Program-made: the position numbers and the translations under genes | The notes under the pieces: model-generated | The model's database searches: none | What the model saw: only the letters and a program-made list of their open reading frames with translations | What the model was told of the DNA's origin: nothing | NCBI GenBank assembly: GCA_946965045.2 | Contig: OX337238.1 | Span: 2,852,001-2,916,000, forward strand | Direction of reading: 5' to 3' | Source: Epithemia pelagica | Lineage: Eukaryota; Protista; Bacillariophyta | Length of the DNA stretch: 64,000 nucleotides | In this document: in pieces, positions 2,109 through 64,000 of the stretch | Layout: every line of letters starts with the position of its first letter | How positions within the stretch are numbered: position 1 is the first letter of the stretch

Positions 2109-3320
2109 ATGACGACTACACAGCAACAGCATGCAAACCAATCGGGGGTTGGCTTTCTCAACATTAATAATAACAGTAACGAGCCACATTGGAATACCAG
2201 TGACTGGCCAACCCTTTTGGGTGGGTGGCGTCGGTGGCATGCATCGGCTGTGCTCGACCATCCCGACCAGGATAACACTGCACAGACGGTTGTAGTTTTG
2301 GGAGGAGACAAACAAGGTCAAGGCTTTACCAACTCAGTTCTGCTGATGAATCTGGCAGAAAAAACTAAGCAATGGCGCGAAGGACCGCCATTAAACCGCA
2401 ACCGAGCCTATCATGCTGCGGTGATTTGTAACGGAGGAGTTTACGTTATCGGAGGACACAATGGAAGTTCACGTTTGGATAGTATCGAACGGATTGATGT
2501 CGAAAATTTGTGTTCCGAATCCATGGAAAGCTCTACCAGCAACCAATGGAAGACTGTGACTTGTCGATTATCTACGAGAAGAAATGAATGTTCGGCTGTT
2601 GTCGTGCACAATCGCTATATTGTCGTGATCGGTGGATCCAACGGAAACTTTTTGTCGTCGGTTGATATAATCGATACAGCTATCGCAAGCAACCACACTG
2701 TGATTGTGGGACCATCCATGTCAGTTCCTTGTTGTGGTTGTGCAAGTGCTGTCATTGGTGATCGCATTTTTGTCGTTGGAGGCTACAATGGGCACAATGC
2801 AGAAGACATCAAATCAGTGGAGTACTTGGAGATTCCTGATCCTTCAGGCAATGAGACAATGACCACAGTAGGTGCAGTGTTTCCATCTTCATGCCGTTGG
2901 ACACGTCATGACCAACTCAATCTTTCCATCCAACGGTGGTTTCATGCAGTTGTAGCTGTTGGATCATGTCTGATTGTTATGGGTGGTCGCTTAGCAGCGG
3001 ACACTGCAGAAGTCTTGGATACTCGCCGAAACACACTTTCGACCTTACCCCAATTAAAAGGGTCACGTTATTCATGCAGTGCTGTGGTTCACTCGAGGGG
3101 AATTGCTGTGATTAGTGGATATGACAATACTTCTTGCGCGACACTCTCCTTGGTTGACAAGAATACGTGGTGTTTTCGTCGACTCACGGAGCAGGCGCCG
3201 AGTACAATCTTTGGGTCAAGAACAGACTCACTGCGATCTTCTCCAGGGCCTACTACATCATGGAAGGAGTCCGGTGAGCGCCGTAAGAAGAAGTTATCAA
3301 CTGGGAAAACTGAGACGTAA
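2109..3320 (+). CDS. Kelch-repeat beta-propeller protein, copy 1 (type A, 403 aa)
   Basis: Six hydrophobic-GG motifs (VVVLGG, VYVIGG, IVVIGG, IFVVGG, LIVMGG, IAVISG), each preceded by R-x-x-H/C and with Kelch-type W/Y spacing. No BTB, F-box or signal peptide visible. The ATG lies in the conserved context tcataaaatctgcaagtaccATG. Confidence 0.93.
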   Translation: MTTTQQQHANQSGVGFLNINNNSNEPHWNTSDWPTLLGGWRRWHASAVLDHPDQDNTAQTVVVLGGDKQGQGFTNSVLLMNLAEKTKQWREGPPLNRNRAYHAAVICNGGVYVIGGHNGSSRLDSIERIDVENLCSESMESSTSNQWKTVTCRLSTRRNECSAVVVHNRYIVVIGGSNGNFLSSVDIIDTAIASNHTVIVGPSMSVPCCGCASAVIGDRIFVVGGYNGHNAEDIKSVEYLEIPDPSGNETMTTVGAVFPSSCRWTRHDQLNLSIQRWFHAVVAVGSCLIVMGGRLAADTAEVLDTRRNTLSTLPQLKGSRYSCSAVVHSRGIAVISGYDNTSCATLSLVDKNTWCFRRLTEQAPSTIFGSRTDSLRSSPGPTTSWKESGERRKKKLSTGKTET

Positions 3321-4440
3321 AAAGTGTTAATTGAGAAATATAAATACTATGATTTAAACTCAGTCATTTACCAACATTCTGGGAGAAATGCACTCCACGT
3401 TGTGTAACACAAACGTGCGAAAGCAAACATAGTTCTAGAGAGCTCACTTCAAGCAATCACTTCGTGATGTTGCTACGATCCTGTGGCACAAGGAACGATC
3501 TGCTTTGTTGGACCCACTGCATTGAAGTGCATTGCAGAAGTCCCCGGAAAAGATTTTGTGCGTCCGGTCGGTTCTTCTCTAGATCTGATGCGTGTCCGCA
3601 GGTTTTGTGGAGGCCACTGTTCGACGCCCCACTTCGCCCGGCGTTGCGCCCGGGACGCGCCGGCGGATTCGCGCCATAATTTTTTAAAATCCACGTTGTC
3701 ATTGACAATGGGAAATGGGAGTGACAAAATGCCGTTCCGCTGTGGATTTGGCCATTGCAGCAATCTGTTTTGGATATCGTGTACGGGACGAGAAACTTGT
3801 TATGCAAGCCAGCAACAAGACGATCTGGAAGTGCTCTTAAATGGCCTCAAAGACTGAAAGGACAAATCAACTAACCAAGGTAGTAATAGGGAGACCACAA
3901 TGGCGACAAGCCATGGGCAAGAAAACTCCAGCAGCAAAACAAGGTCGTAACCACATAAAGGCCCAATTGAACATTCTCCTACGCCAGCACGACACCCTCT
4001 CCCGAATGATCAGGCTGCAGCAGTATAAACTGTTATCGGTCCATCTCCATCTCCTCTCACTTTCATCAGTTGGCATCTGATGATGAATCCTGATCCATAT
4101 CCTTTTCGTCTCTTGTTGGCAGAATCATCACCATCACAATGAACGAGACGGCCCACACATTTCGCACACGTACGTTTCCAGAGTGTTTGTGTCAAGGATG
4201 ATGCTAATGACAATCCAGAATCCAGACACTTTCAAGGACCCACGACCAGGAGGACACTGCTACTGTCAAGCAAATGAGCCACAACCAGCCAGCATCACAC
4301 ATACCGCGGTTCCGGAACGAGGCGTGCTGCTGGAATAAGGGCGAGACCTCTCTTGTGTCATAGGAGTGCGGGTGAGAACAATCGATTGTTAGAATAGGTT
4401 GGATAGATGCACTGCCGAGATTGTATTCACTTCTCCTACC

Positions 4441-4632
4441 AATGCTCCTTGTGCGACACTCTCCTTGGTTGACAAGAATACATGGTGTTTTTGCCAAGTA
4501 TAATCGTTGGGTCAAGAACAGACTCACTGCGATCTACTCCAGGGCGTACTGCAACATGGAAGGAGTCTCATGAGCGCCCTAAGAAGAAGTCATCATCTGG
4601 CATAACTGAGACGAGGAAAATGTCAATTGAGC
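4441..4632 (+). pseudogene. Kelch 3'-end remnant
   Basis: Matches the last ~200 bp of the Kelch genes (tgtgcgacactctccttggttgacaagaatac...agaacagactcactgcgatct...actgagacg) with an internal deletion. Confidence 0.8.
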
Positions 4633-5264: not shown

Positions 5265-6476
5265 ATGACGATGGAACTGCAACAGCAAGCAAAGCAATCT
5301 GGGCTTGCCTTTTTGGACAGTGACAATGACAGTCTTACGCCTCATTGGAATACCAATGACTGGCCTGCCCTTTTAGGTGGGTGGCGTGAGTATCATGCTT
5401 CAGTCGTGCTCGACCATCCCGAACTGGATGACAGGGCACAGACGGTTGTTGTTTTGGGAGGGAAGAAAAAAAATCAAGGGTTGACCAACTCAGTTCAGCT
5501 GATGAATTTGGCAGAAGAAAATAAGCAATGGCGGGAAGGACCGCCGTTGAACAGCAACCGAGCCTATCATGCTGCGGTGGTTTGTAGTGGAGGAGTTTAC
5601 GTGATAGGAGGAGACAGTGGAAGTTCACGCTTGGATAGTATCGAACGGATTGATGTTCAAAAGTTGTATTCCGAATCCATGGAAAGCTCTACCAGCAACC
5701 AATGGACGACCCTGACTTGTCGATTGTCGACGGCAAGAGATGAATGTTCGGCTGATGCCGTCCAAAATCGCTATATTGTCGTGATTGGTGGATCCAACGG
5801 ATACTGTTTGTCGTCGGTTGATATAATCGATACAGCTGCGCCAAGCAACCACACTGTGATTGTGGGACCATCCATGACAGTTCCTCGTTGTGGTTGTGCA
5901 AGTGCTGTCATTGGTGATCGCATTTTTGTTGTTGGAGGCTGCAATGGGCACTCTGGAGAAGATCTCAAATCAGTGGAGTACTTGGAGATTCATGAACCTC
6001 CAGGCAATGAGACAATGACCACAGCAGGTGCAGTGTTTCCATCCTCATGCCGTTGGACACGTCATGACCAGCTTGAGCTTTGCATGTCACGCTGTCAGCA
6101 TGCAGTTGTAGCTGTAGGATCATGTCTGATTGTAATGGGAGGCTACTTTGGCGTGGACACTGCAGAAGTCTTGGATACTCGCCGAAACACTGTGTCGACC
6201 TTTCCCCAATTATCAGGGCCGCGTTATATCTCCGATGCAGTGGTTCACTCGAGGGGAATTGCTGTGATTAGTGTAGATGATAATGCTTCTTGTGCGACAC
6301 TATCGTTGTTTGACAAGAATACGTGGTATTTTTGTCGACTCAGTGAGCAGCCGCCGAGTACAATCTTTGGGACAAGAACAGACTCACTGCGATCTGCTCT
6401 GGAAGCTACTACAGCATTGAAGGAGTTTGATGAACGCCCTAAGAAGATGTTATCAACTGGCAAAACTGAGACGTAA
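5265..6476 (+). CDS. Kelch-repeat protein, copy 2 (type B, 403 aa)
   Basis: Same six-repeat architecture and colinear with copy 1; intact ORF. Confidence 0.93.
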   Translation: MTMELQQQAKQSGLAFLDSDNDSLTPHWNTNDWPALLGGWREYHASVVLDHPELDDRAQTVVVLGGKKKNQGLTNSVQLMNLAEENKQWREGPPLNSNRAYHAAVVCSGGVYVIGGDSGSSRLDSIERIDVQKLYSESMESSTSNQWTTLTCRLSTARDECSADAVQNRYIVVIGGSNGYCLSSVDIIDTAAPSNHTVIVGPSMTVPRCGCASAVIGDRIFVVGGCNGHSGEDLKSVEYLEIHEPPGNETMTTAGAVFPSSCRWTRHDQLELCMSRCQHAVVAVGSCLIVMGGYFGVDTAEVLDTRRNTVSTFPQLSGPRYISDAVVHSRGIAVISVDDNASCATLSLFDKNTWYFCRLSEQPPSTIFGTRTDSLRSALEATTALKEFDERPKKMLSTGKTET

Positions 6477-14220: not shown

Positions 14221-15432
14221 GTGACGATGGAACTGCAACAGCAAGCAAAGCAATCCGGACTTCGCTTTGTGGACAGTGACAACAACAGTCTTGCGCCTCA
14301 TTGGAATACCAATGACTGGCCTCCCCTTTTAGGTGGGTGGCGTCAGTATCATGCTTCAGTCGTGCTTGACCATCCCGAACAGGATGACAGGACACAGACG
14401 GTTGTTGTTTTGGGAGGACGCAAACAAAATCAAGGTTATACCAACTCAGTGGTGTTGTTGAGATTGTCAGATGACAGTAAGCAATGGCGGGAAGGACCGC
14501 CACTGAACGACAAGAGAGGCTTTCATGCTTCGGTGGTTTGTAACGGAGGAGTCTATGTGATCGGAGGATGGAAAGGAAGTTCACACTTGGATAGTATCGA
14601 ACGGATCGATGTTGCAAATTTGTGTTCCGAATCAATGGAAAGCTCTACCAGCAACCAATGGACGACCCTGACATGTCGATTGTCAACGAGGAGAAATGGA
14701 TGTTCGGCTGATGCCGTCCAAAATCGCTATATTGTCGTGATTGGTGGATCCAACGGATACTGTTTGTCGTCGGTTGATATTGTTGATACAGCTGTGCCAA
14801 GCAACCACAATGTGATTGTGGGACCATCCATGTCAGTTCCTCGGTCTGGCTGTGCTAGCGCTGTCGTTGGTGACCGCATTTTTGTCGTTGGAGGCTACAA
14901 TTGGCACAATGGAGAAGATCTCAAATCAGTGGAGTACTTGGAGATTCATAATCCTTCAGGCAATGAGACAATGAACACAGCAGGTGCAGTGTTTCCATCC
15001 TCATGCCGTTGGACACGTCATGACCAACTCAATCTTTCCATGCGACGGTGTGATCATGCAGTTGTAGCTATTGGATCATGTCTGATTGTTATGGGAGATT
15101 TCTTAGCCCGGATCAATGCTGAGGTCTTGGATACTCGACGAAACACAGTGTGGAGCTTTCCCCAATCAACAGGGTCACGTTATTTATGCAGTGCTGTGGT
15201 TCACTCGAGGGGAATTGCTGTGATTGGTGGAGATGACAATGCTTCTTGTGCGACACTATCGTTGTTTGACAAGAATACGTGGTGTTTTCGTCGACTCATT
15301 GAGCAGGTGCCAAGTACAATCTTTGGGACAAGCAGAGACTCACTGCGATCTGCTCAAGGGTGTACTACAGTATTGAATGAGTCTCATGAGCGCTCTAAGA
15401 AGATGTCATCAACTGGCAAAACTGAGACGTAG
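14221..15432 (+). CDS. Kelch-repeat protein, copy 4 (403 aa)
   Basis: Six Kelch motifs (fifth GG altered to GD). The ORF track starts it at GTG (gtgacgatggaactg), the position of the ATG in paralogs; the next in-frame ATG is two codons later. Confidence 0.9.
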   Translation: MTMELQQQAKQSGLRFVDSDNNSLAPHWNTNDWPPLLGGWRQYHASVVLDHPEQDDRTQTVVVLGGRKQNQGYTNSVVLLRLSDDSKQWREGPPLNDKRGFHASVVCNGGVYVIGGWKGSSHLDSIERIDVANLCSESMESSTSNQWTTLTCRLSTRRNGCSADAVQNRYIVVIGGSNGYCLSSVDIVDTAVPSNHNVIVGPSMSVPRSGCASAVVGDRIFVVGGYNWHNGEDLKSVEYLEIHNPSGNETMNTAGAVFPSSCRWTRHDQLNLSMRRCDHAVVAIGSCLIVMGDFLARINAEVLDTRRNTVWSFPQSTGSRYLCSAVVHSRGIAVIGGDDNASCATLSLFDKNTWCFRRLIEQVPSTIFGTSRDSLRSAQGCTTVLNESHERSKKMSSTGKTET

Positions 15433-19660: not shown

Positions 19661-20872
19661 ATGACGACTACACAGCAACAGCATGCAAACCAATCTGGGC
19701 TTGCCTTTCTCAACATTAATAATAACAGTAACGAGCCACATTGGAATACCAGTGACTGGCCAACCCTTTTGGGTGGGTGGCGTCGGTGGCATGTATCGGC
19801 TGTGCTCGACCATCCCGACCAGGATAACACTGCACAGACGGTTGTAGTTTTGGGAGGAGACAAACAAGGTCAAGGCTTTACCAACTCAGTTCTGCTGATG
19901 AATCTGGCAGAAAAAACTAAGCAATGGCGCGAAGGACCGCCATTAAACCGCAACCGAGCCTATCATGCTGCGGTGATTTGTAACGGAGGAGTTTACGTTA
20001 TCGGAGGACACAATGGAAGTTCACGTTTGGATAGTATCGAACGGATTGCTGTCGAAAATTTGTGTTCCGAATCCAAGGAAAGTTCTACCAGCAACCAATG
20101 GACGACTGTGACTTGTCGATTGTCGACCGCAAGAGATAAATGTTCGGCTGTTGCCGTGCACAATCGCTATATTGTTGTGATTGGTGGATACAACGGAGAC
20201 CCTTTGTCGACGGTTGATATAATCGATACAGGTATGGCATGCAACCACACTGCGATTGTGGGACCATTCATGTCACTGCCTCGGTCTGGTTGTGCTAGCG
20301 CTGTCATTGGTAATCGTATTTTGGTTGTTGGAGGCTACAATAGGTATAATGCAGAAGTGCTCCATTCAGTGGAGTACTTGGAGATTCAAGATCATTCAGG
20401 GATCGAGACAATGAACACAGCAAGTGCAGTGTTTCCATCCTCATGCCGTTGGACACGTCATGACCAAATCAATCTTTCCATGCGACGGTGTGATCATGGA
20501 GTTGTAGCTGTTGGATCATGCTTGATTGTTATGGGAGGTTTCTCAGCACCGGACACTGTTGAAGTCTTGGATACTCGCCGAAACACACTTTCGACCTTAC
20601 CCCAATTAACAGGGTCACGTTATTCATGCAGTGCTGTGGTTCACTCGAGGGGAATTGCTGTGATTAGTGGATATGACGATACTTCTTGTGCGACACTATC
20701 GTTGGTTGACAAAAATACGTGGTGTTTTCGTCGACTCATTGAGCAGGTGCCGAGTACAATCTTTGGGTCAAGAACAGACTCACTGCGATCTTCTCCAGGG
20801 CCTACTACATCATGGAAGGAGTCCGGTGAGCGCCGTAAGAAGAAGTTATCAACTGGGAAAACTGAGACGTAA
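19661..20872 (+). CDS. Kelch-repeat protein, copy 5 (type A, 403 aa)
   Basis: Intact ORF; N- and C-termini nearly identical to copy 1. Confidence 0.93.
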   Translation: MTTTQQQHANQSGLAFLNINNNSNEPHWNTSDWPTLLGGWRRWHVSAVLDHPDQDNTAQTVVVLGGDKQGQGFTNSVLLMNLAEKTKQWREGPPLNRNRAYHAAVICNGGVYVIGGHNGSSRLDSIERIAVENLCSESKESSTSNQWTTVTCRLSTARDKCSAVAVHNRYIVVIGGYNGDPLSTVDIIDTGMACNHTAIVGPFMSLPRSGCASAVIGNRILVVGGYNRYNAEVLHSVEYLEIQDHSGIETMNTASAVFPSSCRWTRHDQINLSMRRCDHGVVAVGSCLIVMGGFSAPDTVEVLDTRRNTLSTLPQLTGSRYSCSAVVHSRGIAVISGYDDTSCATLSLVDKNTWCFRRLIEQVPSTIFGSRTDSLRSSPGPTTSWKESGERRKKKLSTGKTET

Positions 20873-24376: not shown

Positions 24377-24378
<2 letters not shown>

Positions 24379-24407: not shown

Positions 24408-24410
<3 letters not shown>

Positions 24411-47013: not shown

Positions 47014-47722
47014 TGGCAGAATTCTCACCAACAACTAGGTTGTGGTGGAATCTACAACTCATCGACTGATGCTAGTATTTTATGGCATCCGATGACATTT
47101 TCGTAAAAGTGAGAAAAGAATGACGGCATGCTCGCAGACCTTTTAATTTCGGCCAAGGCATGCTCGCAATGCACGCGTTATGAGCGACCGATTGGATATT
47201 AATTATGGCCCAACACGTGCGCGCCCATTATTCTCAAGCGCGTGCAATCAATATCCGAGTACGCACCTCCACGACTTAGCCCAACGGCCTAAGTAACCGA
47301 AGCACGAATCACGATCACGCGAGACCATATCTCTATTCCCACAAATCAAAGAATGCAAACAGCAACGCGCCAAGGAAACTACCTATATCATGACAAAGCA
47401 AGAGCTGTTGGCATTGGTATATGATATACAAGTGCATATACTTCCAATACACAATATCAATGTCTACTCCAACCATACCAGTCCTGTCAGCGCCATGAAT
47501 ATATCAGTCATGCACCCTGACCAGACCTGCACACCCACACACACACCGTAGTCCTAAAGCTCACAATCATTAACATTACCATATCATCACGTCTTCAGTG
47601 TCCTGACTATCCCTACGATAGAACCCTTGGGTTTCCTTTGTTCTCTGACCCGTGGAGAACCTTGGTATCAGTTGGTAATCGATTGTGGCTCTTCTAGAGC
47701 GTGTATTGATGAATCTCTACTA
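47014..47722 (+). repeat. 5' LTR (TG...TA)
   Basis: Direct repeat of 52452..53160; 4 differences found by eye. Confidence 0.95.
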
Positions 47723-48290
47723 GATTACCAGTCTCACTGCTTATTTCCCTGCAGTTGCAATTGAAACCTTACTCACCCATCAACACCCGTTACAGATTGA
47801 GCTACCACAACAACAAGAGTTAGAGGACAAAGCTACTCAACCCATCAACAGGGCCAGCCTGGCTAAGGCTAGGGTCACCAATCGTCTCCTTTTCCAGGAC
47901 CTCAAGCTGCACTAGGACTCCGTACAACTACCTTCCCAATACTCATCCAACGAGTGAACCACTTTTGTTGAGGACTACTACGAGTACGACGAAGAAGCCG
48001 CCTTCTGTTACTGAATCTCCGGTTCAACTCGATCACCGCAACGAGTCTGGAAGTGACCAAGAATAAATAACTTTAAGTAGTTTTCACACCAAACAGGAGA
48101 CAAAACCAAGTTCCGGGTACTTCATACGTGGCACACACGTGGCACATCCGGGTTCAGAAGGCACACCACACATCCGGGTTGAGACTTTTACATCCGGGTT
48201 CTCATCACGAAGCACAAGACATTACTAAAGTTTTCGACTAAGACATCGCAGGACACATATCAACATATCTCATCACCAAGTCGAGCAATC

Positions 48291-51200
48291 ATGGAACCGA
48301 CTACATCGACCACACCAGAGTTCCACCCCAATCAAAGTATATCTGATCAAGAAGTCTTTGATCATATTACTCAGGTGTTGTTCAATTTTTCCAAGAAAAG
48401 GGTCGATGTACTCACGAAATGGATGCATCATCATGCTTTTGATGATATACTCAGTATCATCGAACATATGGCGGATGACCCAGAGAAGAATATGGATAAT
48501 ATGGTCAAGTACAAGTCAGGAAAACAAATGCATGACCTACATATCAACACAAGCCATCAGATCAAGTTGCTTGCCTACTGGTACCGACAAAAGAGCACCA
48601 ATATCCAGAGTATCCCTTCCAAGGCAACCTGGATGAATCTGACCAAGGCAGAATTTGATCTATGGAGGATAAACACTGACTTTTGCTCTGGAAGCCCTAT
48701 CACTGACCCAGTATCACCCATGAAGCCTCCATCCCATTCGACGTCATCCAAATCGTTTAGTACTACTTCTGCTGCATCGCAGTCCCAACTGGACCTAACC
48801 GCATTCAAGAAGGGAACCAAGCGTGACGCTATGGCATATGAAACATTCAAGGATGAACGATACTACGACACGTTCTGGAGGACTTTCAAGACCACAGCAA
48901 AAGCCCAAGGTTTATCTCATGTTCTTGACTTCCGATACAAGCCGCCGACAAATGATACGTATGCAACAGAACTTTTCCAAGAGCAACAGATCTTCCTATA
49001 CTCCATCCTTGTGCGCATCATCCAGACTGACCAAGGAAGAGCTTATGTTTGCGAACATGAGCATGATGAAGATGCACGAGCAGTGTTAGACAAGCTTCAC
49101 ACATTGCATACGAAGTCAGACTTAGCAAAACGAGAGGTCTTACGATTAACCAATTACATCTCCAACCTTCGCCTTGATGATACATGGCGTGGATCATCAC
49201 GTCAATTCTTGCTTCATTTCCAAGACAAACTACGTTTACTCGATAACCTTGTTGATCTCTCTGATCGCATACCTGATCACACCAGGATGACGTTTCTTAT
49301 GCAAGCTGTCGAGAAGGTACCTGACCTTCACAGAGTTAAAATCCTGGACAACGTTGTCAACACAAAGTCTGGAGCAAAGTCTTTACGTTATCAATCGTAC
49401 TTCTACATTTTGATGGACGCTGCATATGACCATGATCAAGTCACGCAATCTTCTGCAACTGGTCGTCGTCGTAGTGTCAAGCAACACGAGCAACACGAAA
49501 CACAACATGATATTGAGGGATCCCTTCAGGAAGACGATGCATATCAGATAAACAATACCAACGTCCAAGATGATAACACGGCATCTCCAAAAGCCAGTCT
49601 TCCTTGTGACCTATGGTTTAAACTTCCTGAGGATGCTCACAAGATGATTGTTGAGTATAACAAGAACGTGCAAGCTCCTACTCCAAGTCCAAGAAACGTA
49701 CAGCAACACTCCCTTGACATTGATCCTGAACCTGATCCTGACCCTGGTCAAGATGTTTTCGACGACCTGGACAACCTCACATATCCGCAGGATGATTCCG
49801 ATCCAGCCACCCATCTCATCCATCAAGCAATGACGTCAACCGACCTCAATCATCCAGCTTCTGATTTGTCTAATGTTCTATCCAATGCTGCATCCAAGAC
49901 GAGTAAGAAAGTTAGTTTCAAACAGAAAGAGCACAAGCAGAAGATCCACATGGCTCAGTACATGTTCTCTCGAAAGTCAACCTATACTGGGAATCAACTC
50001 ATCGATTGCGGTGCCAATGGTGGTTTAGCCGGAGCTGACATGTGTATCCTTTCCAAGACAGGTCGTAACATCACGACTGTGGGAATCGACAACCATGAGC
50101 TTACTGGTCTCCCTATTGTCACTTGTGCTGCCAAATTTGAAACTAATGACGGGCCAATCGTCGGCATCTTCAACGAGTATGCATACTATGGAAAAGGACA
50201 GTCTATACATGCGCCTTGCCAATTAGAACATTATGGACTATCTGTGGATGAACGTTCTGTCACGGTGGATGGGAAGCAACGCATCACTACTCTTGATGGA
50301 CGTGCTTTACCTCTCTGTATCAAGGATGGTCTTGCCTATATTCAGTATTTGGGTGTTCCTTCTGATGACGACATGGACAGATCTGCTAAAGTTGATGGCA
50401 AACAATGCATCACTATACTTGGTGGACGTGCTATCCCTCTTCACAGCAAAAATGGATTATCATACATCCACTCCCTTGGTATCCCCAGTGATGATGACAT
50501 GGACACATTACCCCACATCATCTTCACGTCACCTGACATCTGGGATCCTGGTGTTTTAGATCATTTGCATCCTGCCTCATCACCTGACAGTGCTTCTAAC
50601 TGGCAACAAGTCAACACTGATGGTAGTATGACGCATCACCCACATGACAATGACAATTATGGGGAGTACACTGATCGTGATGTCTGTAACCTCACTCACC
50701 TTTTGGATTTACCTTACGATCATGGACCTGATACACCTTCCTTCTCCTCACCCCTTATTGGAGACTCTTGTTCCACTCTGTACCATCAAGATCACAACAT
50801 GAGGACTGAGAAGCGTTATCCTACCGTTAAGAAGATGCCTTACGTCATCATAAACGTTTCTGGTCATCTTCCTCTTCAGATCCTCAATGGTCGCCCACCT
50901 GATTTTTCCCAACCCCTTTTCTTCCTTCTCTGCGACAAGGTCTTCTCCTGTACCGAATCTTATGCACCCTATCTTTGTCCGGATGCCTCTTCAGGGGAGG
51001 AGTCACTTCCAAATAAACCCAATGACAAGCAAGCTGACACCGTTTTCATTTGTAGCAAAGGTGAAGATCCATCCGCACAAATGCCTACGATCAAAAACTG
51101 CGACAAAATTTTTGGACAAGCGTTTCCTTACAAACCAGCAGAGGGAAATGGGGAGCAACAACAAGCATGTATAATCCAACACGTCAATTTAGAACAAGAC

Positions 51201-52544
51201 GCTTTCAAGCAAGAAGCATGTATCAAGAAGTACATTTTCTGCAAACACAATTCCAATATTGACAAGAAGGTGATCTCATGCAGTCAACTTGTGGAATACA
51301 ATGGACAGGACAACCAGGAACAGGCAACTGAAGATGTTGTTTTCCAATTCAGAGATGTTGTCATACATCAAGGACCTTTGAGCAGTAACAACAACCCTGA
51401 CTACAAAGGAAGTCGCTGGAATGTACTTGTCGATTGGGAGACTGGGGAGATGATCTTTGAGCCTCCAACACCCACCATAACCATTGTCTATGGCAAGAAA
51501 CATGACCTACTGAATGAACTTGGATGGAAGCATTTCAAGCATTTTGTCAAGATCAGTGAATGCCTCATTCAAGCTGCTAAACAGCAGTCAAGAATCAAGC
51601 AACTGAGTCTTTTTGTCAAGTACAAGTTTGGTTACCCACACGTTCCACAGACACACAAAGAAGCAATTGTTTTAGACAAGCAACATGGCAAAAACAAGTG
51701 GCAAGACACTACCGATTTTGGACCCTCACAGATTCAATCACTCAAGACATTGAAGGATCATGATCAAGTTCAAGTCCATCTTGGGAAAATGTTAGATGCA
51801 CAAGAAGAGTATCACAACAAGATTCAAGTCTATCGTGTGAAACATGATGATAGATGCAAGGCACTTCTCGTCACGTGTGAACATTTTACCAAAGAACCAG
51901 TTGAGGCAATCTGTCCATGTGCTATTTCCTTTTGCAACTTCCATACTACCATCTACCTTGGGCCTCTCAATGATATGGATATATGGAGAGCATACATTGG
52001 AAATGCATGCAACCTGAAAGCTTTAGCTGGGGAGAAGACCTTGATAGTCGCAAGACAAGAACTCAAGGAATTATGTCACACCTTGGTTACCTACTACAAG
52101 ACCTCAAATGGATTCGATTCTTCAGGAGAACGTCAACATGACTGTTTATTTGATGTCTTTCTTGATATGGATTTGTCACCAAGTAAAGCAATTCCCAATG
52201 TTTGGATGAAGAAAGCACCCGGGGAGAAGAGCTCTGAAGGTATCTGCAACAACTTTACACTCAAGAATGATGGATTTATTATCAACTGCCTCAGACGTTT
52301 TTATACACCAATCCAGAAGATGTTCTCGGCAAACATTGGAAATTCTCCACATGCTAGACAATGTTCAAGACCTTCTTCTTCTTCTAGAATGGAAACAATC
52401 ACAAGAACGACAAAGGAAAATAACAATCCTCACTCGACGAATTGTGGGGAGTGGCAGAATTCTCACCAACAACTAGGTTGTGGTGGAATCTACAACTCAT
52501 CGACTGATGCTAGTATTTTATGGCATCCGATGACATTTTCGTAA
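48291..52544 (+). CDS. Copia Gag-protease polyprotein with decayed integrase and RT remnants (1417 aa)
   Basis: Gag FKKGTKRD..Y..FKDERYYD.FW, protease LIDCGANGGLAG, integrase tail PLQILNGRPPDFS, RT remnants KYKFG..VP...EA..LD..HG...WQD, VKHDDRCKALLV and SPSKA.PNVWM. No integrase DDE core, no YVDD, no RNase H; the stop lies inside the 3' LTR. Confidence 0.88.
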   Translation: MEPTTSTTPEFHPNQSISDQEVFDHITQVLFNFSKKRVDVLTKWMHHHAFDDILSIIEHMADDPEKNMDNMVKYKSGKQMHDLHINTSHQIKLLAYWYRQKSTNIQSIPSKATWMNLTKAEFDLWRINTDFCSGSPITDPVSPMKPPSHSTSSKSFSTTSAASQSQLDLTAFKKGTKRDAMAYETFKDERYYDTFWRTFKTTAKAQGLSHVLDFRYKPPTNDTYATELFQEQQIFLYSILVRIIQTDQGRAYVCEHEHDEDARAVLDKLHTLHTKSDLAKREVLRLTNYISNLRLDDTWRGSSRQFLLHFQDKLRLLDNLVDLSDRIPDHTRMTFLMQAVEKVPDLHRVKILDNVVNTKSGAKSLRYQSYFYILMDAAYDHDQVTQSSATGRRRSVKQHEQHETQHDIEGSLQEDDAYQINNTNVQDDNTASPKASLPCDLWFKLPEDAHKMIVEYNKNVQAPTPSPRNVQQHSLDIDPEPDPDPGQDVFDDLDNLTYPQDDSDPATHLIHQAMTSTDLNHPASDLSNVLSNAASKTSKKVSFKQKEHKQKIHMAQYMFSRKSTYTGNQLIDCGANGGLAGADMCILSKTGRNITTVGIDNHELTGLPIVTCAAKFETNDGPIVGIFNEYAYYGKGQSIHAPCQLEHYGLSVDERSVTVDGKQRITTLDGRALPLCIKDGLAYIQYLGVPSDDDMDRSAKVDGKQCITILGGRAIPLHSKNGLSYIHSLGIPSDDDMDTLPHIIFTSPDIWDPGVLDHLHPASSPDSASNWQQVNTDGSMTHHPHDNDNYGEYTDRDVCNLTHLLDLPYDHGPDTPSFSSPLIGDSCSTLYHQDHNMRTEKRYPTVKKMPYVIINVSGHLPLQILNGRPPDFSQPLFFLLCDKVFSCTESYAPYLCPDASSGEESLPNKPNDKQADTVFICSKGEDPSAQMPTIKNCDKIFGQAFPYKPAEGNGEQQQACIIQHVNLEQDAFKQEACIKKYIFCKHNSNIDKKVISCSQLVEYNGQDNQEQATEDVVFQFRDVVIHQGPLSSNNNPDYKGSRWNVLVDWETGEMIFEPPTPTITIVYGKKHDLLNELGWKHFKHFVKISECLIQAAKQQSRIKQLSLFVKYKFGYPHVPQTHKEAIVLDKQHGKNKWQDTTDFGPSQIQSLKTLKDHDQVQVHLGKMLDAQEEYHNKIQVYRVKHDDRCKALLVTCEHFTKEPVEAICPCAISFCNFHTTIYLGPLNDMDIWRAYIGNACNLKALAGEKTLIVARQELKELCHTLVTYYKTSNGFDSSGERQHDCLFDVFLDMDLSPSKAIPNVWMKKAPGEKSSEGICNNFTLKNDGFIINCLRRFYTPIQKMFSANIGNSPHARQCSRPSSSSRMETITRTTKENNNPHSTNCGEWQNSHQQLGCGGIYNSSTDASILWHPMTFS

Positions 52545-53160
52545 AAGTGAGAAAAGAATGACGGCATGCTCGCAGACCTTTTAATTTCGGCCAAGGCATG
52601 CTCGCAATGCACGCGTTATGAGCGACCGATTGGATATTAATTATGGCCCAACACGTGCGCGCCCATTATTCTCAAGCGCGTGCAATCAATATCCGAGTAC
52701 GCACCTCCACGACTTAGCCCAACGGCCTAAGTAACCGAAGCACAAATCATGATCACCCGAGACCATATCTCTATTCCCATAAATCAAAGAATGCAAACAG
52801 CAACGCGCCAAGGAAACTACCTATATCATGACAAAGCAAGAGCTGTTGGCATTGGTATATGATATACAAGTGCATATACTTCCAATACACAATATCAATG
52901 TCTACTCCAACCATACCAGTCCTGTCAGCGCCATGAATATATCAGTCATGCACCCTGACCAGACCTGCACACCCACACACACACCGTAGTCCTAAAGCTC
53001 ACAATCATTAACATTACCATATCATCACGTCTTCAGTGTCCTGACTATCCCTACGATAGAACCCTTGGGTTTCCTTTGTTCTCTGACCCGTGGAGAACCT
53101 TGGTATCAGTTGGTAATCGATTGTGGCTCTTCTAGAGCGTGTATTGATGAATCTCTACTA
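52452..53160 (+). repeat. 3' LTR (TG...TA)
   Basis: Direct repeat of 47014..47722. Confidence 0.95.
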
Positions 53161-53975
53161 ATCGGTACGCACCACCAGCAACCAATGGATGACCTTGCAA
53201 AAATTGTCGATCTGCGGCAAGATATGAATGTGCGGCTGTTACCGTCTATAATCGCTATATTGTCGTGATAGGTGGTTCTCTCTGCGCAAACGATTTGTCG
53301 TCGGTTGATATAATCGATACAGCTATCGAAAGCAACCACACTGTGATTTCGGGACCATCCATGACAGTTCCGCGGTCTGGTTGTGCATGTGCTGTCATTG
53401 GTAATCGCATTTTTGTTGTTGGAGGCTTAAGTTGTTGGACAGCTCTCGCCTCAGTAGAGTACTTGGAAATTCATGATGCTTCAGGCAATGAGACAATGAA
53501 CACAGCAAGCACAGTGTTTCCATCCTCTTGTCGTTGGACACGTCATGACAAGCTGAATCTTTCCATCCGACGGAGTTTTCATGCAATTGCAGCTGTGGGA
53601 TCCTGTCTGATTGTTATGGGAGGTACGAGAGCTGGGACCACTGCAGAAGTCTTGGATACTTGTCGAAATACTGTGTGGACCCTTCCCCTATCAACGTTGT
53701 GGCGTTGTTCTTTCAGTGCTGTGGTTCACTCAAGAGGAATTGCAGTGATTAGTGGAAGTTTAATTGCTTCTTGTGAGACACTGTCGTTGATTGACAAGAA
53801 TACGTGGTGTTTTCGTCGACTCACTGAGCAGGTGTCGAGTGCAATGTTTTCAAAACTCCCTGTGATCAGAACCTATTACAGTAATGAAGGAGTCGAATGA
53901 GCGCAAAGCTGTCCAGTGAGAACCTATAAATTGTGCATGTAGAACACGTTCATAAAAATAGAAAGAAGAAGTACA

Positions 53976-54800
53976 TTGTGGCAGCAATTCAAACCTGATA
54001 TGATGGTATGTCTTGGTGGCGGGTCTTCAATGGATGCGGCCAAGTATATTCGGGCCGCGATGTACGAACATCCTAAATTGTCGCTGCAGGATGCAGTGGC
54101 CCGATTCCTGGAATTGCGACAGCGTACATGTCCTTTCCCGGTCCTGGGATCGAACTTCCACTGTTCTCGTACCGTTGGACTCCCGACATTGCCATTATTG
54201 ATTCTAGTTTTTGCGAAAAGTTACCCCCAATCCTGATTGTCTACGCCGGTATCGATACCATTACGCATGCTACCGAAACACTTGTGTCGGTTGCGGCCAA
54301 TGATTTTACGCAGGATGATAGACTTCGAACACTTCAGCTCTTGACTGACAATTTAGTCGATTCCTTTGTTACGGGCAACGCCGACGCTCGCGATGCTGTT
54401 CATCACGGTGCTACCTTGGCTGGTTTGGCCTTTAGGAACAGTTTTTCGGGCATTGCGCACAGCTTGGCACACAAAATGGGAGCCGTGTTTCATCTTCCAC
54501 ATGAATTAGTGTGTGGTATTGTGTTGCCTCACGTGATTCAATTCAACAGTTCGTTGACACCCACCCGCATGGGAGTCTTTCCAGGTTATGATTATCCAAA
54601 AGTACTGGAACAGTATGCGACCATTGCTCGCCACATGGGACTGCTCTAGGAGGACGGCATACCGCATACCAATACGGAACTCATGGAAGCGTACATTGCC
54701 AAATTATATGTCATGTACGATGCAATGAGTGTTCCCAAAACCGTTTTTGAAGCTGGATGTTCGGAAGAAGTGTTCTTGGATCAACTTGATGATATTTTGT
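53976..54800 (+). pseudogene. adhE: AdhE-like Fe-ADH fragment, second copy
   Basis: Colinear paralog of 9460..10292 with a different premature stop (TAG at 54647-54649). Confidence 0.75.
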
Positions 54801-58077: not shown

Positions 58078-59929
58078 ATGATGACTACACTGCAAAAGCA
58101 AGCAAAGCAATCTGGGTTTTGCTTTCTGGACAGTGACAATAACAGTCTTGCGCCTCATTGGAATAACAATGACTGGCGTCCCCTTTTGGGTAGGTGGCGT
58201 CGCTATCATGCTTCAGTTGTGCTCAACCATCCCGAACAGGATAACAATGCACAGACGGTTGTAGTTTTGGGAGGAGACACACAAATACATGGCTACAACA
58301 ACTCAGTGTTGTTGTTGAGTTTGGGAGAAGAAAACAAGCAATGGCGGGAAGGACCGCCGTTGAACAGCAACCGAGCCTATCATGCTGCTGTGGTTTGTAA
58401 CGGAGGAGTTTACGTGATAGGAGGACACAATGGATGTTCACGTTTGGATAGTATCGAACGGATTGATGTTGCAAATTTGTGTTCATATTCGATGGAAAGC
58501 TCTACCAGCAACCAATGGACGACCCTGACTTGTCGATTGTCTACGGCAAGAGATGAATGTTCGGCTGTTGCCGTGCACAATCGCTATCTTGTTGTGATTG
58601 GTGGATCCAACGGAGTCCTTTTGTCGACGGTTGATATAATCGATACAGGTACCGCAAGCAACCACACTTTGATTGTGGGACCATCCATGTCACTGCCTCG
58701 GTCTGGTTGTGCTAAGGGCTGGGTAAGCCGATCCATGTTCGGCTAAGTAGGCTCAGTACATTAACCTACGTACTACTATTTTCGTCTGTGTAAGAAGTGG
58801 GGCGGATGGTCTCAAATTGAAAACTTGCTGCCACGAGAAACAATGCAAATTGGAAGCCATCGCTCGACAATGGTGGAAGCCATCACCCCCATGGCCATAA
58901 CTTCCTCAATAATAGAGCTTGCCTCGACCGCTTTGACAAGAAGATTATTTACTACTAGAGTGACTATGCATTCAATTCGGTCGAGTCAGCATTGAAAAAT
59001 GAGTGAGTTAGGGCGGTCGTTCGATTTCATCACTGCAGAAAAATGAGCGTACCTTTTCAGCCAACTTGGCAAATCTTCTGTAATTTTAGACAACAATATC
59101 AAAGGTAAAGGCTAAGGACTTACGGTGGTTGGATGTTTATGCGATGCATGGGTGAATGCATACGGCGTCACCGGATCTCGCCATCATTGTCGAGCGTTTT
59201 TGCATTTTTTTGAAATTCCGACCATTTCCGGCGTGACGTCAACTATGAGATTTTGTGTACTCTACGTAGGTTTTGTACTGAGCCTACCTAGCCGAACATG
59301 GATCGGCTTACCCAGCCCTTAGCGCTGTCATTGGCAATCGTATTTTTGTTGTTGGAGGCTACAATAGGCACAATGAAGAAGTGTTCCAATCAGTGGAGTA
59401 CTTGGAGATTAATGATCATTCAGGCAACGAGACAATGAACACAGCAAGTGCAGTGTTTCCATCCTCATGCCGTTGGACACGACATGATCATCTCAATCTT
59501 TCCATGCAACGGTGTTTTCATGCAGTTGTAGCTGTTGGACCATGCCTGATTGTTGTGGGAGGTTCCTTAGCAGCGGACACTGTTGAAGTCTTGGATACTC
59601 GCCAAAACACTGTGTGGACCTTTCCACGATCAGCACCGCCCCGTATTTGCTCCACTGCTGTGGTTCACTCGAGGGGAAGTGCCGTGATTAGTGGATATGA
59701 CAATACTTCTTGTGCGACACTATCGTTGAGTGACAAGAATACGTGGTGTTTTCGTCGACTAACGGAGCAGGTGCCGAGTACAATCTTTGGGTCAAGAACA
59801 GACTCACTGCGATCTACTTCAGGGCCTACTACAGCAATGAAGGAGTCTGATGAGTGCCATGAGAAGAAACTGAAACGTAGAATGTGTCAATTGAGACATA
59901 AAAATACCAGGAGTAAAACGCAGTCATGA
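58078..59929 (+). pseudogene. Kelch copy 13 interrupted by a MITE
   Basis: Removing 58715..59319 plus one TA restores ...RSGCASAVIGNRIFVVGG... in frame through to the stop at 59929. Confidence 0.92.
58715..59319. mobile_element. MITE, 605 bp, with ~46-58 bp TIRs and a TA target-site duplication
   Basis: Left AGGGCTGGGTAAGCCGATCCATGTTCGGCTAAGTAGGCTCAGTACA is the reverse complement of the right end with one mismatch. TA flanks both ends, the empty site GCTAGC is seen in paralogs, and there is no transposase ORF. Confidence 0.95.
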
Positions 59930-61951: not shown

Positions 61952-63778
61952 TCTGAGAGCGACAGTGAACGAGGGGATGACTTTGGGCGCCTCCCTTTCT
62001 GTGGGTCTTACTGGTCATGCTCTTGTGCTGATTCGAGCGATTCTTCCAGAGTCCCAACCACACACGGACCACAACATCTACCCACAGACGGACAGTCCAA
62101 ACGTTTGCCTTTTCTTGGATTCGATCCAGCCGCTGTAAAGTGCTCTTCTCTTTGCTTTGTTTTGTCTTTTTTGTTGTTGTTTGGGGATATCGTTAATTGT
62201 TACTACGACTTTCTTGTTCTTTCCGGAACCACAATGTCATGATGGTCTCTCTTTTGTCTTCCTCGTCTCTCGTCGTTTCGCCGAGAGTCCTTTTACAGTT
62301 CGCGTCACAGTCCTACACCCTACACTGAGTTCTCTACTACTTATCTGATTGGAAGGCATCCGAGTCCCGAGTCCGAAGTACTTTCGCGACTATACTCGAA
62401 CTTCCGATTCCGATCCCGTCTCAGACGCCCGCGACTCCACATAAAAAAGGAATCCCCGTCTGTCCGAGTCACGGATGTCACGGGCCAACAAAAAAAAGAT
62501 CCTATCACCATGACGACCTACGGACAAAACGACGGCCCACACACATTCGCACACGTTTCCAGTGTGTTTGTTGTGTCAAGAATGATGATGATGATCGAGT
62601 GATGGCGGAAATCCTCCAGACACACTCACTCACTCCGATGAACAGCACTCTCCAAACGGCATGACGGATGATTTGCGCAGAGAATGTTTCTTTTTGGGGA
62701 GGATGACGACGACAAAGTCCGTTGTGGTCTATGTATAAAGATCGTTGGCAAAAACACACAGACAGACAGGAATGGGGGAGCTGGTGGAGCATTCGACAGG
62801 ATGCCGCCGTCCTCGTTGCCGAATTTCGCGGGTCCTTTTTGGGCCACTATATAATACGTGAGGATGATACCCAGCCCGAAACGCCGCCATGGAGCTCTAC
62901 ACCAGTCATCCTCGAACCAAACCAAAATAAAACAAAACCATGGAGCCGCATTCACAACCACCACAACCACAAGGACGAGGACTACACAATGCTGCTTCAA
63001 ACTGGAGCAAGAGACTAGCATTCTACCATAACCATTGGCACTGTTTCGCAACGACTTGTTGAGTTGCGACACTGCTCGTGCCACACAGTGAGGAGAGAAC
63101 GAGCGATGATGAGGCTAATGATTGAACCATGAGCTCACAAAGAGAGAGCCAAAGTCGCTGTCTCAACGTGGAAGCTCCTAGCATTTGTTGCATCTTTGCG
63201 TTTGCCAGTGTGGGACAACCGTGTGTGATCGATGATTGGATTGGAACCTATGGATTTGGCCCATTTCGTTGCGCATGGAGGAGGATAGAGCGTTTGGCTG
63301 TGATGCTGATGTATTGTACAAACAGCCAGAAGGAATTTGAAAAGTGCCTCAAGACTGTAACGGACAAGTACTGCTAACTTACCAATATACAGTGGCAAAG
63401 GGGTTCCAGTGAGGCCACGCGTTCTTCTAAATGGTCAGTGTATTCGTGGAATCTCTGGATTTGTGCCGAAGCAGTTATTTTCGTGGATGGTTTTGGACCC
63501 GTTCATCTGTCCAAGTTCATCCATCCGATGACTCAAAGAAGGATGGTTTTGGACGTGTTCATCTGTCCAAGGCCATCCATCCGAGGATATACGACCATGA
63601 TTCAAATCGCCGCGTAGAGGTGCGTCCGTCGTTGCTGCCGTCTTTGGTTCCTGCTTTGGTGTGAAAGGTCCAAAATATTCAGTCCATTTTGTTCGGAGTC
63701 CATTTTCGTATTTTTTTGAGGAGAAAGACGAAACTCTGAGGTCCATTCCTTGGTGTTGTCATAGAATCTGCAAGTACC

Positions 63779-64000
63779 ATGACGACTTCACAGCAACAGC
63801 ATGCAAACCAATCTGGGCTTGGCTTTCTCAACATTAATAATAACAGTAACGAGCCACATTGGAATACCAGTGACTGGCCAACCCTTTTGGGTGGGTGGCG
63901 TCGGTGGCATGTATCGGCTGTGCTCGACCATCCCGACCAGGATAACACTGCACAGACGGTTGTAATTTGGGAGGAGACAAACAAGGTCAAGGCTTTACCA
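63779..64000 (+). CDS. Kelch copy 14 (type A), partial at the window end
   Basis: ATG 63779, MTTSQQQHANQ...; 1-bp deletion near 63966 (gttgtaatttggga against gttgtagttttggga in paralogs), which may be an error. Confidence 0.8.
   Translation, partial: MTTSQQQHANQSGLGFLNINNNSNEPHWNTSDWPTLLGGWRRWHVSAVLDHPDQDNTAQTVVIWEETNKVKALP

What the first reader, a model, noticed from the sequence alone, without database searches (positions are those of the whole stretch)
2109..64000. Dense array of 14 stand-alone Kelch propeller genes with variation concentrated in the GG-adjacent loops
Seen: 14 same-strand copies in 62 kb, each essentially a bare six-blade propeller. The strands are conserved, while residues after each GG and around R-x-x-H vary strongly. 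Blade 3: SNGNF, SNGYC, SLCAND, YNGDP, SNRNL, SNGVL. Blade 4: YNGHNA, CNGHSG, LRCWT, YNWHNG, LTGYNG. Blade 5: IQRWFH, MSRCQH, IRRSFH, MRRCDH, IGRCIH, ILPTRH; also RLAAD, YFGVD, MRAWT, FLARI, FSAPD, ILAPE. Established: these loops form the ligand-binding top face of Kelch propellers such as Keap1 and KLHL proteins. Inference: a birth-and-death repertoire of intracellular recognition proteins under diversifying selection, possibly an innate-immune or self/non-self sensor family in a diatom.
Basis: partly seen in the sequence, partly recalled or inferred. Interest (0 to 1): 0.78.

Follow-up and report, generated by a model that had tools for sequence, protein, structure and literature searches.

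The report
Hypervariable stand-alone Kelch gene array
A diatom chromosome carries a head-to-tail row of small Kelch propeller genes from a family of hundreds; the protein scaffold is conserved while the usual ligand-binding face varies and is reshuffled between copies, as expected for a set of binding proteins whose targets are still unknown.

Summary
The window has 14 same-strand Kelch-only genes: 9 uninterrupted ORFs and 5 broken copies (frameshift, in-frame deletion, LTR retrotransposon, MITE, one at the window end). It lies in a roughly 550-kb supercluster on contig C11, and the family has hundreds of copies genome-wide.

An AlphaFold model gives a six-blade KLHL/Keap1-type propeller with no BTB, F-box or signal peptide. 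Structure-defined site classes differ sharply: strands dN/dS 0.26-0.37, bottom loops about 0.7, disordered C-tail about 1, BC loops 1.3-1.9. The residue after each GG is flagged in all six blades. dS is not raised in the loops, so this is not a mutation hotspot.

Copies are clear mosaics. My null simulations show that such mosaicism inflates tree-based tests, so I rely on tree-free pN/pS. That supports dN/dS above 1 only modestly, with confidence intervals starting near 1.

No RNA run exists for this organism, so expression is untested. Birth-and-death evolution and variation focused on the binding face are supported. Diversifying selection is probable. An immune or self/non-self role is untested.

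The scan has already reported this family from other windows of this genome (33 notes); this report is independent confirmation on new DNA.

The parts
2109..3320 (+). k01, intact 403-aa Kelch-only gene (reference copy, folded)
1815..1902 (+). two copies of the 32-bp upstream motif GGATGGTTTTGGACCCGTTCATCTGTCCAAGG, 205-295 bp before the ATG. The same motif precedes every copy that keeps its own 5' flank (21 hits in the window)
4423..4613 (+). short frameshifted C-terminal Kelch fragment (residues 334-403). Its duplicate lies at 33937-34127
5265..6476 (+). k02, intact 403 aa
8239..9360 (+). k03, 373-aa ORF. The propeller is complete but the normal C-tail is replaced at a junction with an Fe-ADH fragment
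14221..15432 (+). k04, full ORF. A deletion of about 60 bp removed the leader and the ATG (GTG at the start, Met at residue 3)
19661..20872 (+). k05, intact 403 aa
21270..22481 (+). k06, intact 403 aa. It starts only 400 bp after k05 and lacks the upstream motif
25583..26791 (+). k07, intact 402 aa (ATG at 25583)
31621..32832 (+). k08, intact 403 aa
34776..35986 (+). k09, pseudogene with a frameshift near 34967 (residue 64)
38327..39010 (+). k10, in-frame internal deletion of codons 6-169 (blades 1-2 lost). It also has a shortened blade-5 BC loop
42977..44188 (+). k11, intact 403 aa and a clear mosaic: residues 1-161 are 94-99% like k01, residues 212-403 are 93-100% like k02/L007
46593..46994 (+). 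k12, 5' part (residues 1-134) of a copy split by the LTR element
47014..53160 (+). LTR retrotransposon, 6147 bp, 710-bp LTRs 99.4% identical, 5-bp target duplication ATCGG, one 1417-aa ORF (48291-52544)
53205..53900 (+). k12, 3' part (residues 152-368, k03-type C-end)
58078..58740 (+). k13, 5' part (residues 1-221)
58715..59319 (.). 605-bp MITE with terminal inverted repeats of about 45 bp and a TA target duplication, inserted in blade 4 of k13
59321..59929 (+). k13, 3' part (residues 213-396)
63779..64000 (+). k14, first 63 residues. The copy continues beyond the window in another frame

Best explanation
The window is a slice of a very large gene family seen so far almost only in this diatom. 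Each gene encodes a small cytosolic or nuclear protein that is a six-blade KLHL/Keap1-type Kelch propeller, with a short N-terminal helix, a C-terminal helix and a disordered basic tail.

Shown: the array grows by tandem and segmental duplication. It is homogenised and reshuffled by recombination or gene conversion between copies. It loses members to frameshifts, deletions and transposon insertions. Selection keeps the beta-strand scaffold, while amino-acid change is concentrated in the BC loops (above all the residue right after each GG) and in some DA-loop residues. In solved Kelch complexes these loops form the substrate pocket on the upper face. Synonymous divergence is not raised there.

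Inferred: the family is a repertoire of binding proteins with many different specificities. It is diversified by selection on the binding face plus shuffling of loop variants. Each member binds its ligand on the upper face. The conserved remainder (long conserved CD-loop insertions on the lower face and the terminal helices) is free to contact a common partner. What the ligands are (pathogen, symbiont, mating or endogenous proteins) is unknown.
For: Copies and lesions.

Family size and clustering: 924 first-look candidates, and all 103 scored matches at E <= 2e-107. More than 70 copies lie in C11:2.49-3.04 Mb, and further clusters lie on C3, C6, C8, C9, C10, C13 and C17.

Fold: AF2 pLDDT 80.8, six blades. 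Foldseek's best natural hits are KLHL12, KLHL20, KLHL3 and Keap1 Kelch domains, TM 0.77-0.83 normalised by target. phmmer against PDB agrees. Pfam shows Kelch families only.

Upper face formed by DA and BC loops: Canning et al. 2013, PMC3597819.

Site classes fixed from the model before counting:
- NG86 dN/dS (window 9 copies / all 29): strands 0.24/0.29, bottom loops 0.57/0.60, DA 0.68/0.73, BC 1.39/1.46, C-tail about 1.
- Bootstrap over codons: BC 1.42-1.72, lower bounds 0.98-1.17.
- Codon-model class fits on per-blade trees: BC 1.9 (LRT 20.6) with 29 copies and 1.6 (p = 0.054) with the 9 window copies; strands 0.26-0.32.

Site level: 31 sites have P(beta>alpha) >= 0.9, and 21 of them are in BC/DA loops (Fisher p = 2e-5). 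GG+1 is flagged in all six blades.

Independent definition: the 40 most variable propeller columns among 41 paralogues under 60% identical fall 32/40 in BC/DA loops and include 5 of the 6 GG+1 sites. In the C11 copies these 32 give pN/pS 1.3-1.8.

dS in BC loops (0.16-0.19) is lower than in strands (0.28-0.32).

Recombination: the four-gamete incompatibility of neighbouring sites is 0.34 against 0.456 +/- 0.012 after permutation. Nearest relatives change along the gene.
Against: No expression data: the only runs that hold the stretch are DNA.

dN/dS above 1 is modest in the tree-free tests, and some intervals touch 1.

In null simulations with half of the sites on a wrong tree, my site test flagged 5-16 of 403 sites, and one of five replicates gave a class LRT of 40. 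The tree-based p-values therefore cannot be taken at face value.

Single-site LRTs do not survive correction for 403 tests (best p = 0.0007).

DA loops average about neutral. Whole-gene dN/dS is 0.6, and 5 of 14 copies are dead, so part of the family may be drifting.

No ligand or partner is known. The lower-face insertions are conserved in sequence, but their dN/dS (0.5-0.8) is not significantly below 1 in the window.
Confidence: 0.65

Rival explanations
1. Relaxed constraint only. The loops are simply free to vary (dN/dS about 1) on a constrained scaffold, and recombination spreads variants. No adaptive diversification occurs and the copies are functionally redundant.
For: The tree-free lower confidence bounds sit at 0.97-1.2. 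The disordered C-tail gives 1.0-1.2 by the same method. DA loops average 0.7-1.0. Mosaic null simulations can produce 5-16 flagged sites and occasionally a large class LRT.
Against: BC-loop point estimates exceed 1 by every method (1.3-1.9), even though that class includes the invariant GG. The six GG+1 sites have pN/pS 4-9 with pS below average (chosen post hoc). Five of them are also among the 40 most variable of 324 columns in distant subfamilies (my hypergeometric estimate is about 1e-4). I observed 31 flagged sites, against 0 in correct-tree nulls and 5-16 in mosaic nulls.
Confidence: 0.22
2. Mostly inert amplified DNA. The array is an unexpressed by-product of segmental duplication in a duplication-prone chromosome region, and the ORFs are decaying.
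For: 5 of 14 copies are broken. Transposons have inserted. Near-identical recent duplicates exist. There is no RNA evidence. About 16 of 103 scored genomic matches carry stops.
Against: Strands show strong purifying selection across copies that differ by dS of about 0.25 (dN/dS 0.26-0.37; LRT 68-83). Thirty-five residues are invariant across 61 paralogues down to 49% identity. The upstream region and its 32-bp motif are conserved. Transcript-sized contigs from another organism encode a stand-alone homologue.
Confidence: 0.08
3. Sugar-binding or enzymatic Kelch-type propeller (galactose oxidase, glyoxal oxidase or NanM type) rather than a protein-recognition module.
For: Weak Pfam matches to NANM (28 bits) and Glyoxal_oxid_N (24 bits).
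Against: Both matches are below their curated cut-offs (45 and 37.5). The best sequence and fold matches are KLHL-type substrate-adaptor propellers. No signal peptide is visible in the N-terminus. An enzyme active site would be conserved, whereas here the central upper face is the most variable part.
Confidence: 0.04

Closest known systems
KLHL / Keap1 BTB-BACK-Kelch substrate adaptors of Cul3 ligases
   Same: Six-blade Kelch propeller. They are the best sequence and fold matches (KLHL12, KLHL20, KLHL3, Keap1). In these proteins the substrate pocket is shaped by the same BC and DA loops that vary here (PMC3597819).
   Different: No BTB or BACK domain, and only about 40 residues before blade 1. 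Hundreds of tandem paralogues rather than a few dozen dispersed, conserved genes. No link to a cullin is shown.
Expanded F-box and MATH-BTB adaptor families of nematodes and plants, including plant F-box-Kelch genes (Thomas 2006, Genome Res, cited from my own knowledge; MATH-BTB expansion in grasses, PMC4091423)
   Same: Large, clustered, birth-and-death families. The substrate-binding domain evolves fast while the rest is conserved. They have been proposed to target pathogen proteins.
   Different: Those proteins carry the ligase-docking domain in the same chain. The diatom proteins are the recognition domain alone.
Podospora HNWD / het-d, het-e NLRs with hypervariable WD40 propellers (PMC1805685, PMC2873952)
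   Same: A beta-propeller in which a few periodic positions on one face are under diversifying selection. Repeats or copies are shuffled by recombination, and the family forms a non-self recognition repertoire.
   Different: WD40, not Kelch. There the shuffling is between repeats within a gene, and the propeller is fused to NACHT and effector domains. Here whole single-domain genes are the unit.
Diatom Ty1/copia-like 'CoDi/Blackbeard' LTR retrotransposons (relates only to the insertion in k12)
   Same: 710-bp LTRs, 5-bp target duplication, one long ORF. Protein-language-model features are nearest to clusters named Blackbeard / RVT_2 (score 0.91).
   Different: Pfam finds no RVT_2, rve or gag domain in the 1417-aa ORF, so membership is a lead only.

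Membership tests
Kelch-repeat beta-propeller (Pfam Kelch_1 and its clan) | Kelch motif profile match above the curated threshold | tested here: met
   Kelch_1 scores 114.2 bits against a cut-off of 20.1 in k01, and 76-84 bits in three other copies.
Kelch-repeat beta-propeller (Pfam Kelch_1 and its clan) | Closed propeller of four-stranded blades with a GG doublet after strand B | tested here: met
   AF2 model, pLDDT 80.8, with six blades of four strands. GG is invariant in blades 1-5 across 61 paralogues. TM 0.77-0.83 to solved Kelch domains.
BTB-BACK-Kelch (KLHL/KBTBD) Cul3 adaptors | N-terminal BTB and BACK domains | tested here: not met
   No BTB/BACK hit in four copies at E <= 0.01. There are only about 40 residues before blade 1. 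The ORF is closed 13 codons upstream of the ATG.
F-box-Kelch (FBK) SCF adaptors | N-terminal F-box | tested here: not met
   No F-box hit. Kelch_FKB95 matches only the propeller part.
NLR-type receptors with propeller sensor (fungal HNWD-like) | NACHT/NB-ARC nucleotide-binding domain in the same protein | tested here: not met
   Pfam shows Kelch families only. The longer predicted relatives also carry only Kelch families.
Galactose oxidase / NanM type propellers | Family profile above threshold, secretion signal | tested here: not met
   NANM 28.3 bits against a cut-off of 45. Glyoxal_oxid_N 24.1 against 37.5. The N-terminus is polar.
Gene family under diversifying selection on its binding face | dN/dS above 1 at binding-face sites, shown by a method robust to recombination | tested here: inconclusive
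   Tree-free pN/pS: BC loops 1.42-1.72 (CI from 0.98-1.17). Independently defined hypervariable upper-face sites 1.3-1.8 (CI from 0.93-1.19). The tree-based LRT is significant but sensitive to mosaicism.
Gene family under diversifying selection on its binding face | Expression of the copies | not testable with these tools
   Only DNA runs hold the stretch and no RNA run is on record.
Ty1/copia LTR retrotransposon (insertion in k12) | LTRs plus 5-bp target-site duplication | tested here: met
   LTRs 47014-47722 and 52451-53160 at 99.4% identity. ATCGG lies on both sides.
Ty1/copia LTR retrotransposon (insertion in k12) | RVT_2 / integrase domains in the ORF | tested here: not met
   No Pfam family at E <= 1, apart from two chance-level hits. 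There is only a feature-space lead.

The most novel reading that the evidence does not exclude
The family is an intracellular variable-receptor system of a diatom. Hundreds of single-domain Kelch propellers each present a different upper-face pocket. Selection and cassette shuffling between copies keep the pockets diverse, so that they recognise fast-evolving non-self proteins (virus, parasite or bacterial effectors, or partners in mating or allorecognition). The conserved lower-face insertions and terminal helices dock all of them to one common downstream effector. The shared 32-bp promoter motif allows co-ordinated or selective expression of the C11 subfamily.
Probability: 0.25. Interest if true: 0.85.

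Novelty: new variant of a known kind. Interest (0 to 1): 0.6.

Why it matters
Diatoms are major primary producers under constant attack from viruses, parasites and algicidal bacteria, yet no recognition-receptor repertoire is established for them.

A family of hundreds of stand-alone Kelch propellers, with a fixed scaffold and a shuffled, fast-changing binding face, would be a candidate for such a repertoire. It would also be a natural example of a single-domain binding-protein library. I found no paper in the held library describing a Kelch expansion in diatoms.

For this window alone the value is confirmatory, because the scan has already noted the family in other windows of the same genome. 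New here:
- a calibration showing how far recombination can fake the tree-based signal;
- the six-fold GG+1 periodicity;
- the finding that dS is not raised in the loops;
- the subfamily-specific upstream motif;
- transcript-sized homologues in another organism.

Tried and rejected
Expression test. The look-up of sequencing runs found four runs from one study.

Tree-based positive-selection test as sole evidence. I rejected this after mosaic null simulations gave 5-16 false sites and one class LRT of 40. Correct-tree nulls gave 0 false sites.

Search for a fused or neighbouring partner domain. Pfam on 20 non-Kelch ORFs of the window gave only an Fe-ADH C-terminal fragment and chance-level hits, including CARD at E 0.02-0.085 in an orphan Ser-rich ORF. 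That ORF has relatives only in this genome.

Alternate-haplotype comparison. The second ENA contig (ctg1253l) seems to be a paralogous segment of the same assembly rather than a second haplotype.

Retroposition as the copying mechanism. Copies share about 240-400 bp of upstream DNA and larger, varied flanks. They sit head to tail in nested segmental duplications, and no poly(A) is seen at the 3' end of homology.

Hypermutation of the loops. dS is not raised there.

Literature. No paper on diatom Kelch expansions was found, and none names the run or assembly accessions.

Full report
OBSERVATION

The window is G000:C11:2852001-2916000 of a 60.5-Mb, 23-contig genome. Earlier notes of this scan call it a pennate diatom; I did not test that.

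tblastn of the first 403-aa ORF against the window, followed by direct translation, finds 14 copies. All are on the + strand, 1.6-6 kb apart. There are also two short C-terminal fragments.

Nine copies are uninterrupted ORFs:
- k01 2109-3320, k02 5265-6476, k05 19661-20872, k06 21270-22481, k07 25583-26791, k08 31621-32832 and k11 42977-44188 are canonical.
- k03 (8239-9360) has lost the usual C-tail at a junction with an Fe-ADH fragment.
- k04 (14221-15432) has lost its leader and ATG through a deletion of about 60 bp.

Five copies are broken, each in a different way:
- k09 has a frameshift.
- k10 has an in-frame loss of codons 6-169.
- k12 is split in its blade-2 CD loop by a 6147-bp LTR element (LTRs 99.4% identical, target duplication ATCGG).
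- k13 is split in blade 4 by a 605-bp MITE with a TA duplication.
- k14 runs off the window and changes frame at residue 63.

A self-comparison shows nested segmental duplications from 0.4 to 6.3 kb at 76-100% identity.

WHAT THE PROTEIN IS

Pfam finds only Kelch families (Kelch_1 114 bits against a cut-off of 20.1), with no BTB, BACK, F-box or other domain.

An AlphaFold2 model built on 61 paralogues has mean pLDDT 80.8. It is a six-blade propeller of four-stranded blades. It is preceded by a short helix (residues 2-11) and followed by a helix (351-361) and a disordered basic tail.

Foldseek's best natural matches are the Kelch domains of KLHL12, KLHL20, KLHL3 and Keap1, several of them in complex with substrate peptides (TM by target 0.77-0.83). 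phmmer against PDB sequences agrees.

The N-terminus is polar, so a classical signal peptide is unlikely (sequence).

SCALE AND RANGE

In the window's own genome the first look finds 924 candidate matches. All 103 scored matches have E <= 2e-107. More than 70 lie in C11:2.49-3.04 Mb, mostly on the + strand from 2.74 Mb onward. Other clusters lie on C3, C6, C8, C9, C10, C13 and C17.

In the word-indexed search of 5.8 billion protein clusters, the best 120 hits all come from one ENA assembly. In the exhaustive search of 1.84 billion representatives, 139 proteins reach E <= 1e-30. Of 19 family-like representatives I looked up, 17 are on long ENA contigs. All six looked up by contig belong to ERZ21939226. 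That assembly also holds the window's own proteins, so it is the same organism.

The two exceptions are transcript-sized Logan contigs (1.4-2.1 kb) from runs SRR26379917, SRR26379919 and SRR26379920. In one of them the ORF is flanked by about 40 and 100 bases and the contig ends in Illumina adapter sequence. They encode stand-alone Kelch proteins 33% identical to k01 over the whole length. Their best match in this genome is only 46% identical.

So a relative in another organism has the family and probably transcribes it. The run type is not known to me, so this is an inference. I found no paper on a diatom Kelch expansion.

WHERE THE VARIATION IS

I fixed site classes from the model's secondary structure before counting: BC loops (after GG), DA loops (around R-x-x-H), AB and CD loops, strands, and tails. 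Canning et al. 2013 state that the substrate site lies on the upper face and is shaped by the DA and BC loops (PMC3597819).

I analysed the nine window ORFs alone, and also together with 20 intact copies fetched from the same supercluster.

Pairwise Nei-Gojobori dN/dS:

| Site class | Window, 9 copies | All 29 copies |
|---|---|---|
| Strands | 0.24 | 0.29 |
| Bottom loops (AB + CD) | 0.57 | 0.60 |
| DA loops | 0.68 | 0.73 |
| BC loops | 1.39 | 1.46 |
| C-tail | 1.03 | 0.96 |
| Whole gene | 0.58 | 0.62 |

dS is lower in BC loops (0.16-0.19) than in strands (0.28-0.32). The excess change is therefore nonsynonymous and not a mutation hotspot.

Bootstrapping codons gives BC 1.42-1.72, with lower 95% bounds of 0.98-1.17 depending on the kappa correction and the data set. 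Strands give 0.29-0.37.

SITE-LEVEL TEST AND ITS CALIBRATION

I wrote a FUBAR-like grid analysis. It uses a GY-type codon model with F3x4 frequencies, one IQ-TREE tree per blade-sized partition, and empirical-Bayes weights.

With 29 copies, 31 of 403 sites have P(beta>alpha) >= 0.9:
- 12 of 58 BC sites
- 9 of 69 DA sites
- 1 of 116 strand sites
- 4 of 81 bottom-loop sites
- 5 of 79 tail sites

The enrichment in upper-face loops has Fisher p = 2e-5. The residue immediately after GG is flagged in all six blades (67, 117, 177, 226, 294, 338, each with P >= 0.93).

Class fits give BC dN/dS 1.9 (LRT 20.6), DA 1.0, strands 0.32 and C-tail 1.0. With the nine window copies alone, BC is 1.6 (p = 0.054) and strands 0.26.

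Calibration results:
- With omega <= 1 on the correct trees, 0 of 403 sites were flagged in three replicates, and the maximum class LRT was 5.6.
- With half of the sites evolved on another partition's tree, 5-16 sites were flagged, and one of five replicates reached a class LRT of 40 with omega up to 1.55.

Recombination can therefore mimic much, though not all, of the tree-based signal. No single-site LRT survives correction for 403 tests (best p = 0.0007).

INDEPENDENT DEFINITION OF THE FAST SITES

I took the 40 most variable propeller columns among 41 paralogues that are under 60% identical to k01 (other subfamilies). Thirty-two of these columns lie in BC or DA loops, and they include 5 of the 6 GG+1 sites.

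In the C11 copies, tree-free pN/pS is:
- 1.3-1.8 for these 32 sites (lower bounds 0.93-1.19)
- 0.50-0.62 for the rest of the propeller
- 4-9 for the six GG+1 sites, which were chosen post hoc

RECOMBINATION

About 46% of informative site pairs fail the four-gamete test. Neighbouring sites are much more compatible than permuted ones (0.340 against 0.456 +/- 0.012 in the window; 0.234 against 0.294 +/- 0.007 for 29 copies).

Nearest relatives change along the gene. k11 is 94-99% identical to k01 over residues 1-161, and 93-100% identical to k02/L007 over residues 212-403. k04 matches k06/L005 at 98% only in the last segment.

Loop variants recur in different combinations, for example MSRCQH or IKRWFH paired with YFGVD.

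OTHER ANATOMY

Copies share 240-400 bp of upstream DNA. It contains one or two copies of the 32-bp motif GGATGGTTTTGGACCCGTTCATCTGTCCAAGG, 205-295 bp before the ATG. There are 21 hits in the window and none in shuffles. Genome-wide there are 76 hits at up to 3 mismatches. All lie in C11:2.62-3.04 Mb, and those I could place beside a scored copy lie on the same strand as that gene. The motif therefore marks this subfamily's promoter region. Its function is untested.

The two long CD-loop insertions on the lower face (131-146 and 242-263) are conserved in sequence. Their dN/dS (0.5 and 0.8) is not significantly below 1 in the window.

INTERPRETATION

- Shown: a clustered, recombining, birth-and-death family of Kelch-only genes, with a purified scaffold and variation focused on the canonical binding face.
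- Probable (about two in three): diversifying selection on a subset of upper-face residues.
- Inferred, untested: a repertoire of binding proteins with many specificities, possibly docking to a common partner through the conserved parts.
- Not supported by any data here: which ligands are bound, and whether the role is immunity, allorecognition or something else.

The main rival is relaxed constraint on the loops without adaptive value. An inert, decaying array is unlikely given the strand constraint.

RELATION TO EARLIER NOTES

The scan holds 33 notes on this family in the same genome. Five follow-ups reached the same reading as this report. My analysis on this window agrees, but it tempers the 'faster than neutral' claim by showing how sensitive it is to recombination.

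Noticed in passing
window 47014-53160: Young LTR retrotransposon (710-bp LTRs 99.4% identical, 5-bp TSD ATCGG). Its 1417-aa ORF has no Pfam domain at all, although protein-language-model features place it next to 'Blackbeard'/RVT_2 copia-like clusters. A paralogous segment (L029) carries the same disrupted Kelch copy plus about 4.3 kb more, containing a 1036-aa ORF.
   Followed up: partly
window 58715-59319: 605-bp MITE with terminal inverted repeats of about 45 bp and a TA target duplication, inserted in Kelch copy k13. Its genome-wide copy number was not checked.
   Followed up: partly
window 1815-1846 and 20 further sites; G000:C11:2.62-3.04 Mb: The 32-bp motif GGATGGTTTTGGACCCGTTCATCTGTCCAAGG lies 205-295 bp upstream of the Kelch start codons, often in two copies 56 bp apart. 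Genome-wide there are 76 hits, all inside this one supercluster. It is a candidate shared cis-regulatory element.
   Followed up: partly
window 9609-10241 and about 54128-54649: C-terminal-domain fragment of an iron-containing alcohol dehydrogenase (PF25137, E 2e-31) lies just after the truncated copies k03 and k12 and was duplicated with them. No N-terminal ADH domain was seen.
   Followed up: partly
window 55499-57052 (-) and 11014-11904 (-): Orphan Ser-rich ORF (517 aa; its paralogue is 296 aa) with a hydrophobic stretch near the C-end. It has relatives only in this genome. Its weak CARD hits (E 0.02-0.085) are at chance level.
   Followed up: partly
L025-L028 (Logan contigs of SRR26379917, SRR26379919, SRR26379920): Transcript-sized contigs from another, unidentified organism encode stand-alone Kelch proteins of 415-468 aa. 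They are 33-46% identical to this family, so the family is not strictly confined to one genome.
   Followed up: partly
window 1-596 versus 6731-7326; G000:C11:2847379-2848587: A tandem duplication with a 6730-bp period has 100% identity across 596 bp, and a copy whose match to k01 scores as 100% identical lies just upstream of the window. The partner of k02 there carries a TAG stop. This is either a very recent duplication or an assembly duplication.
   Followed up: no
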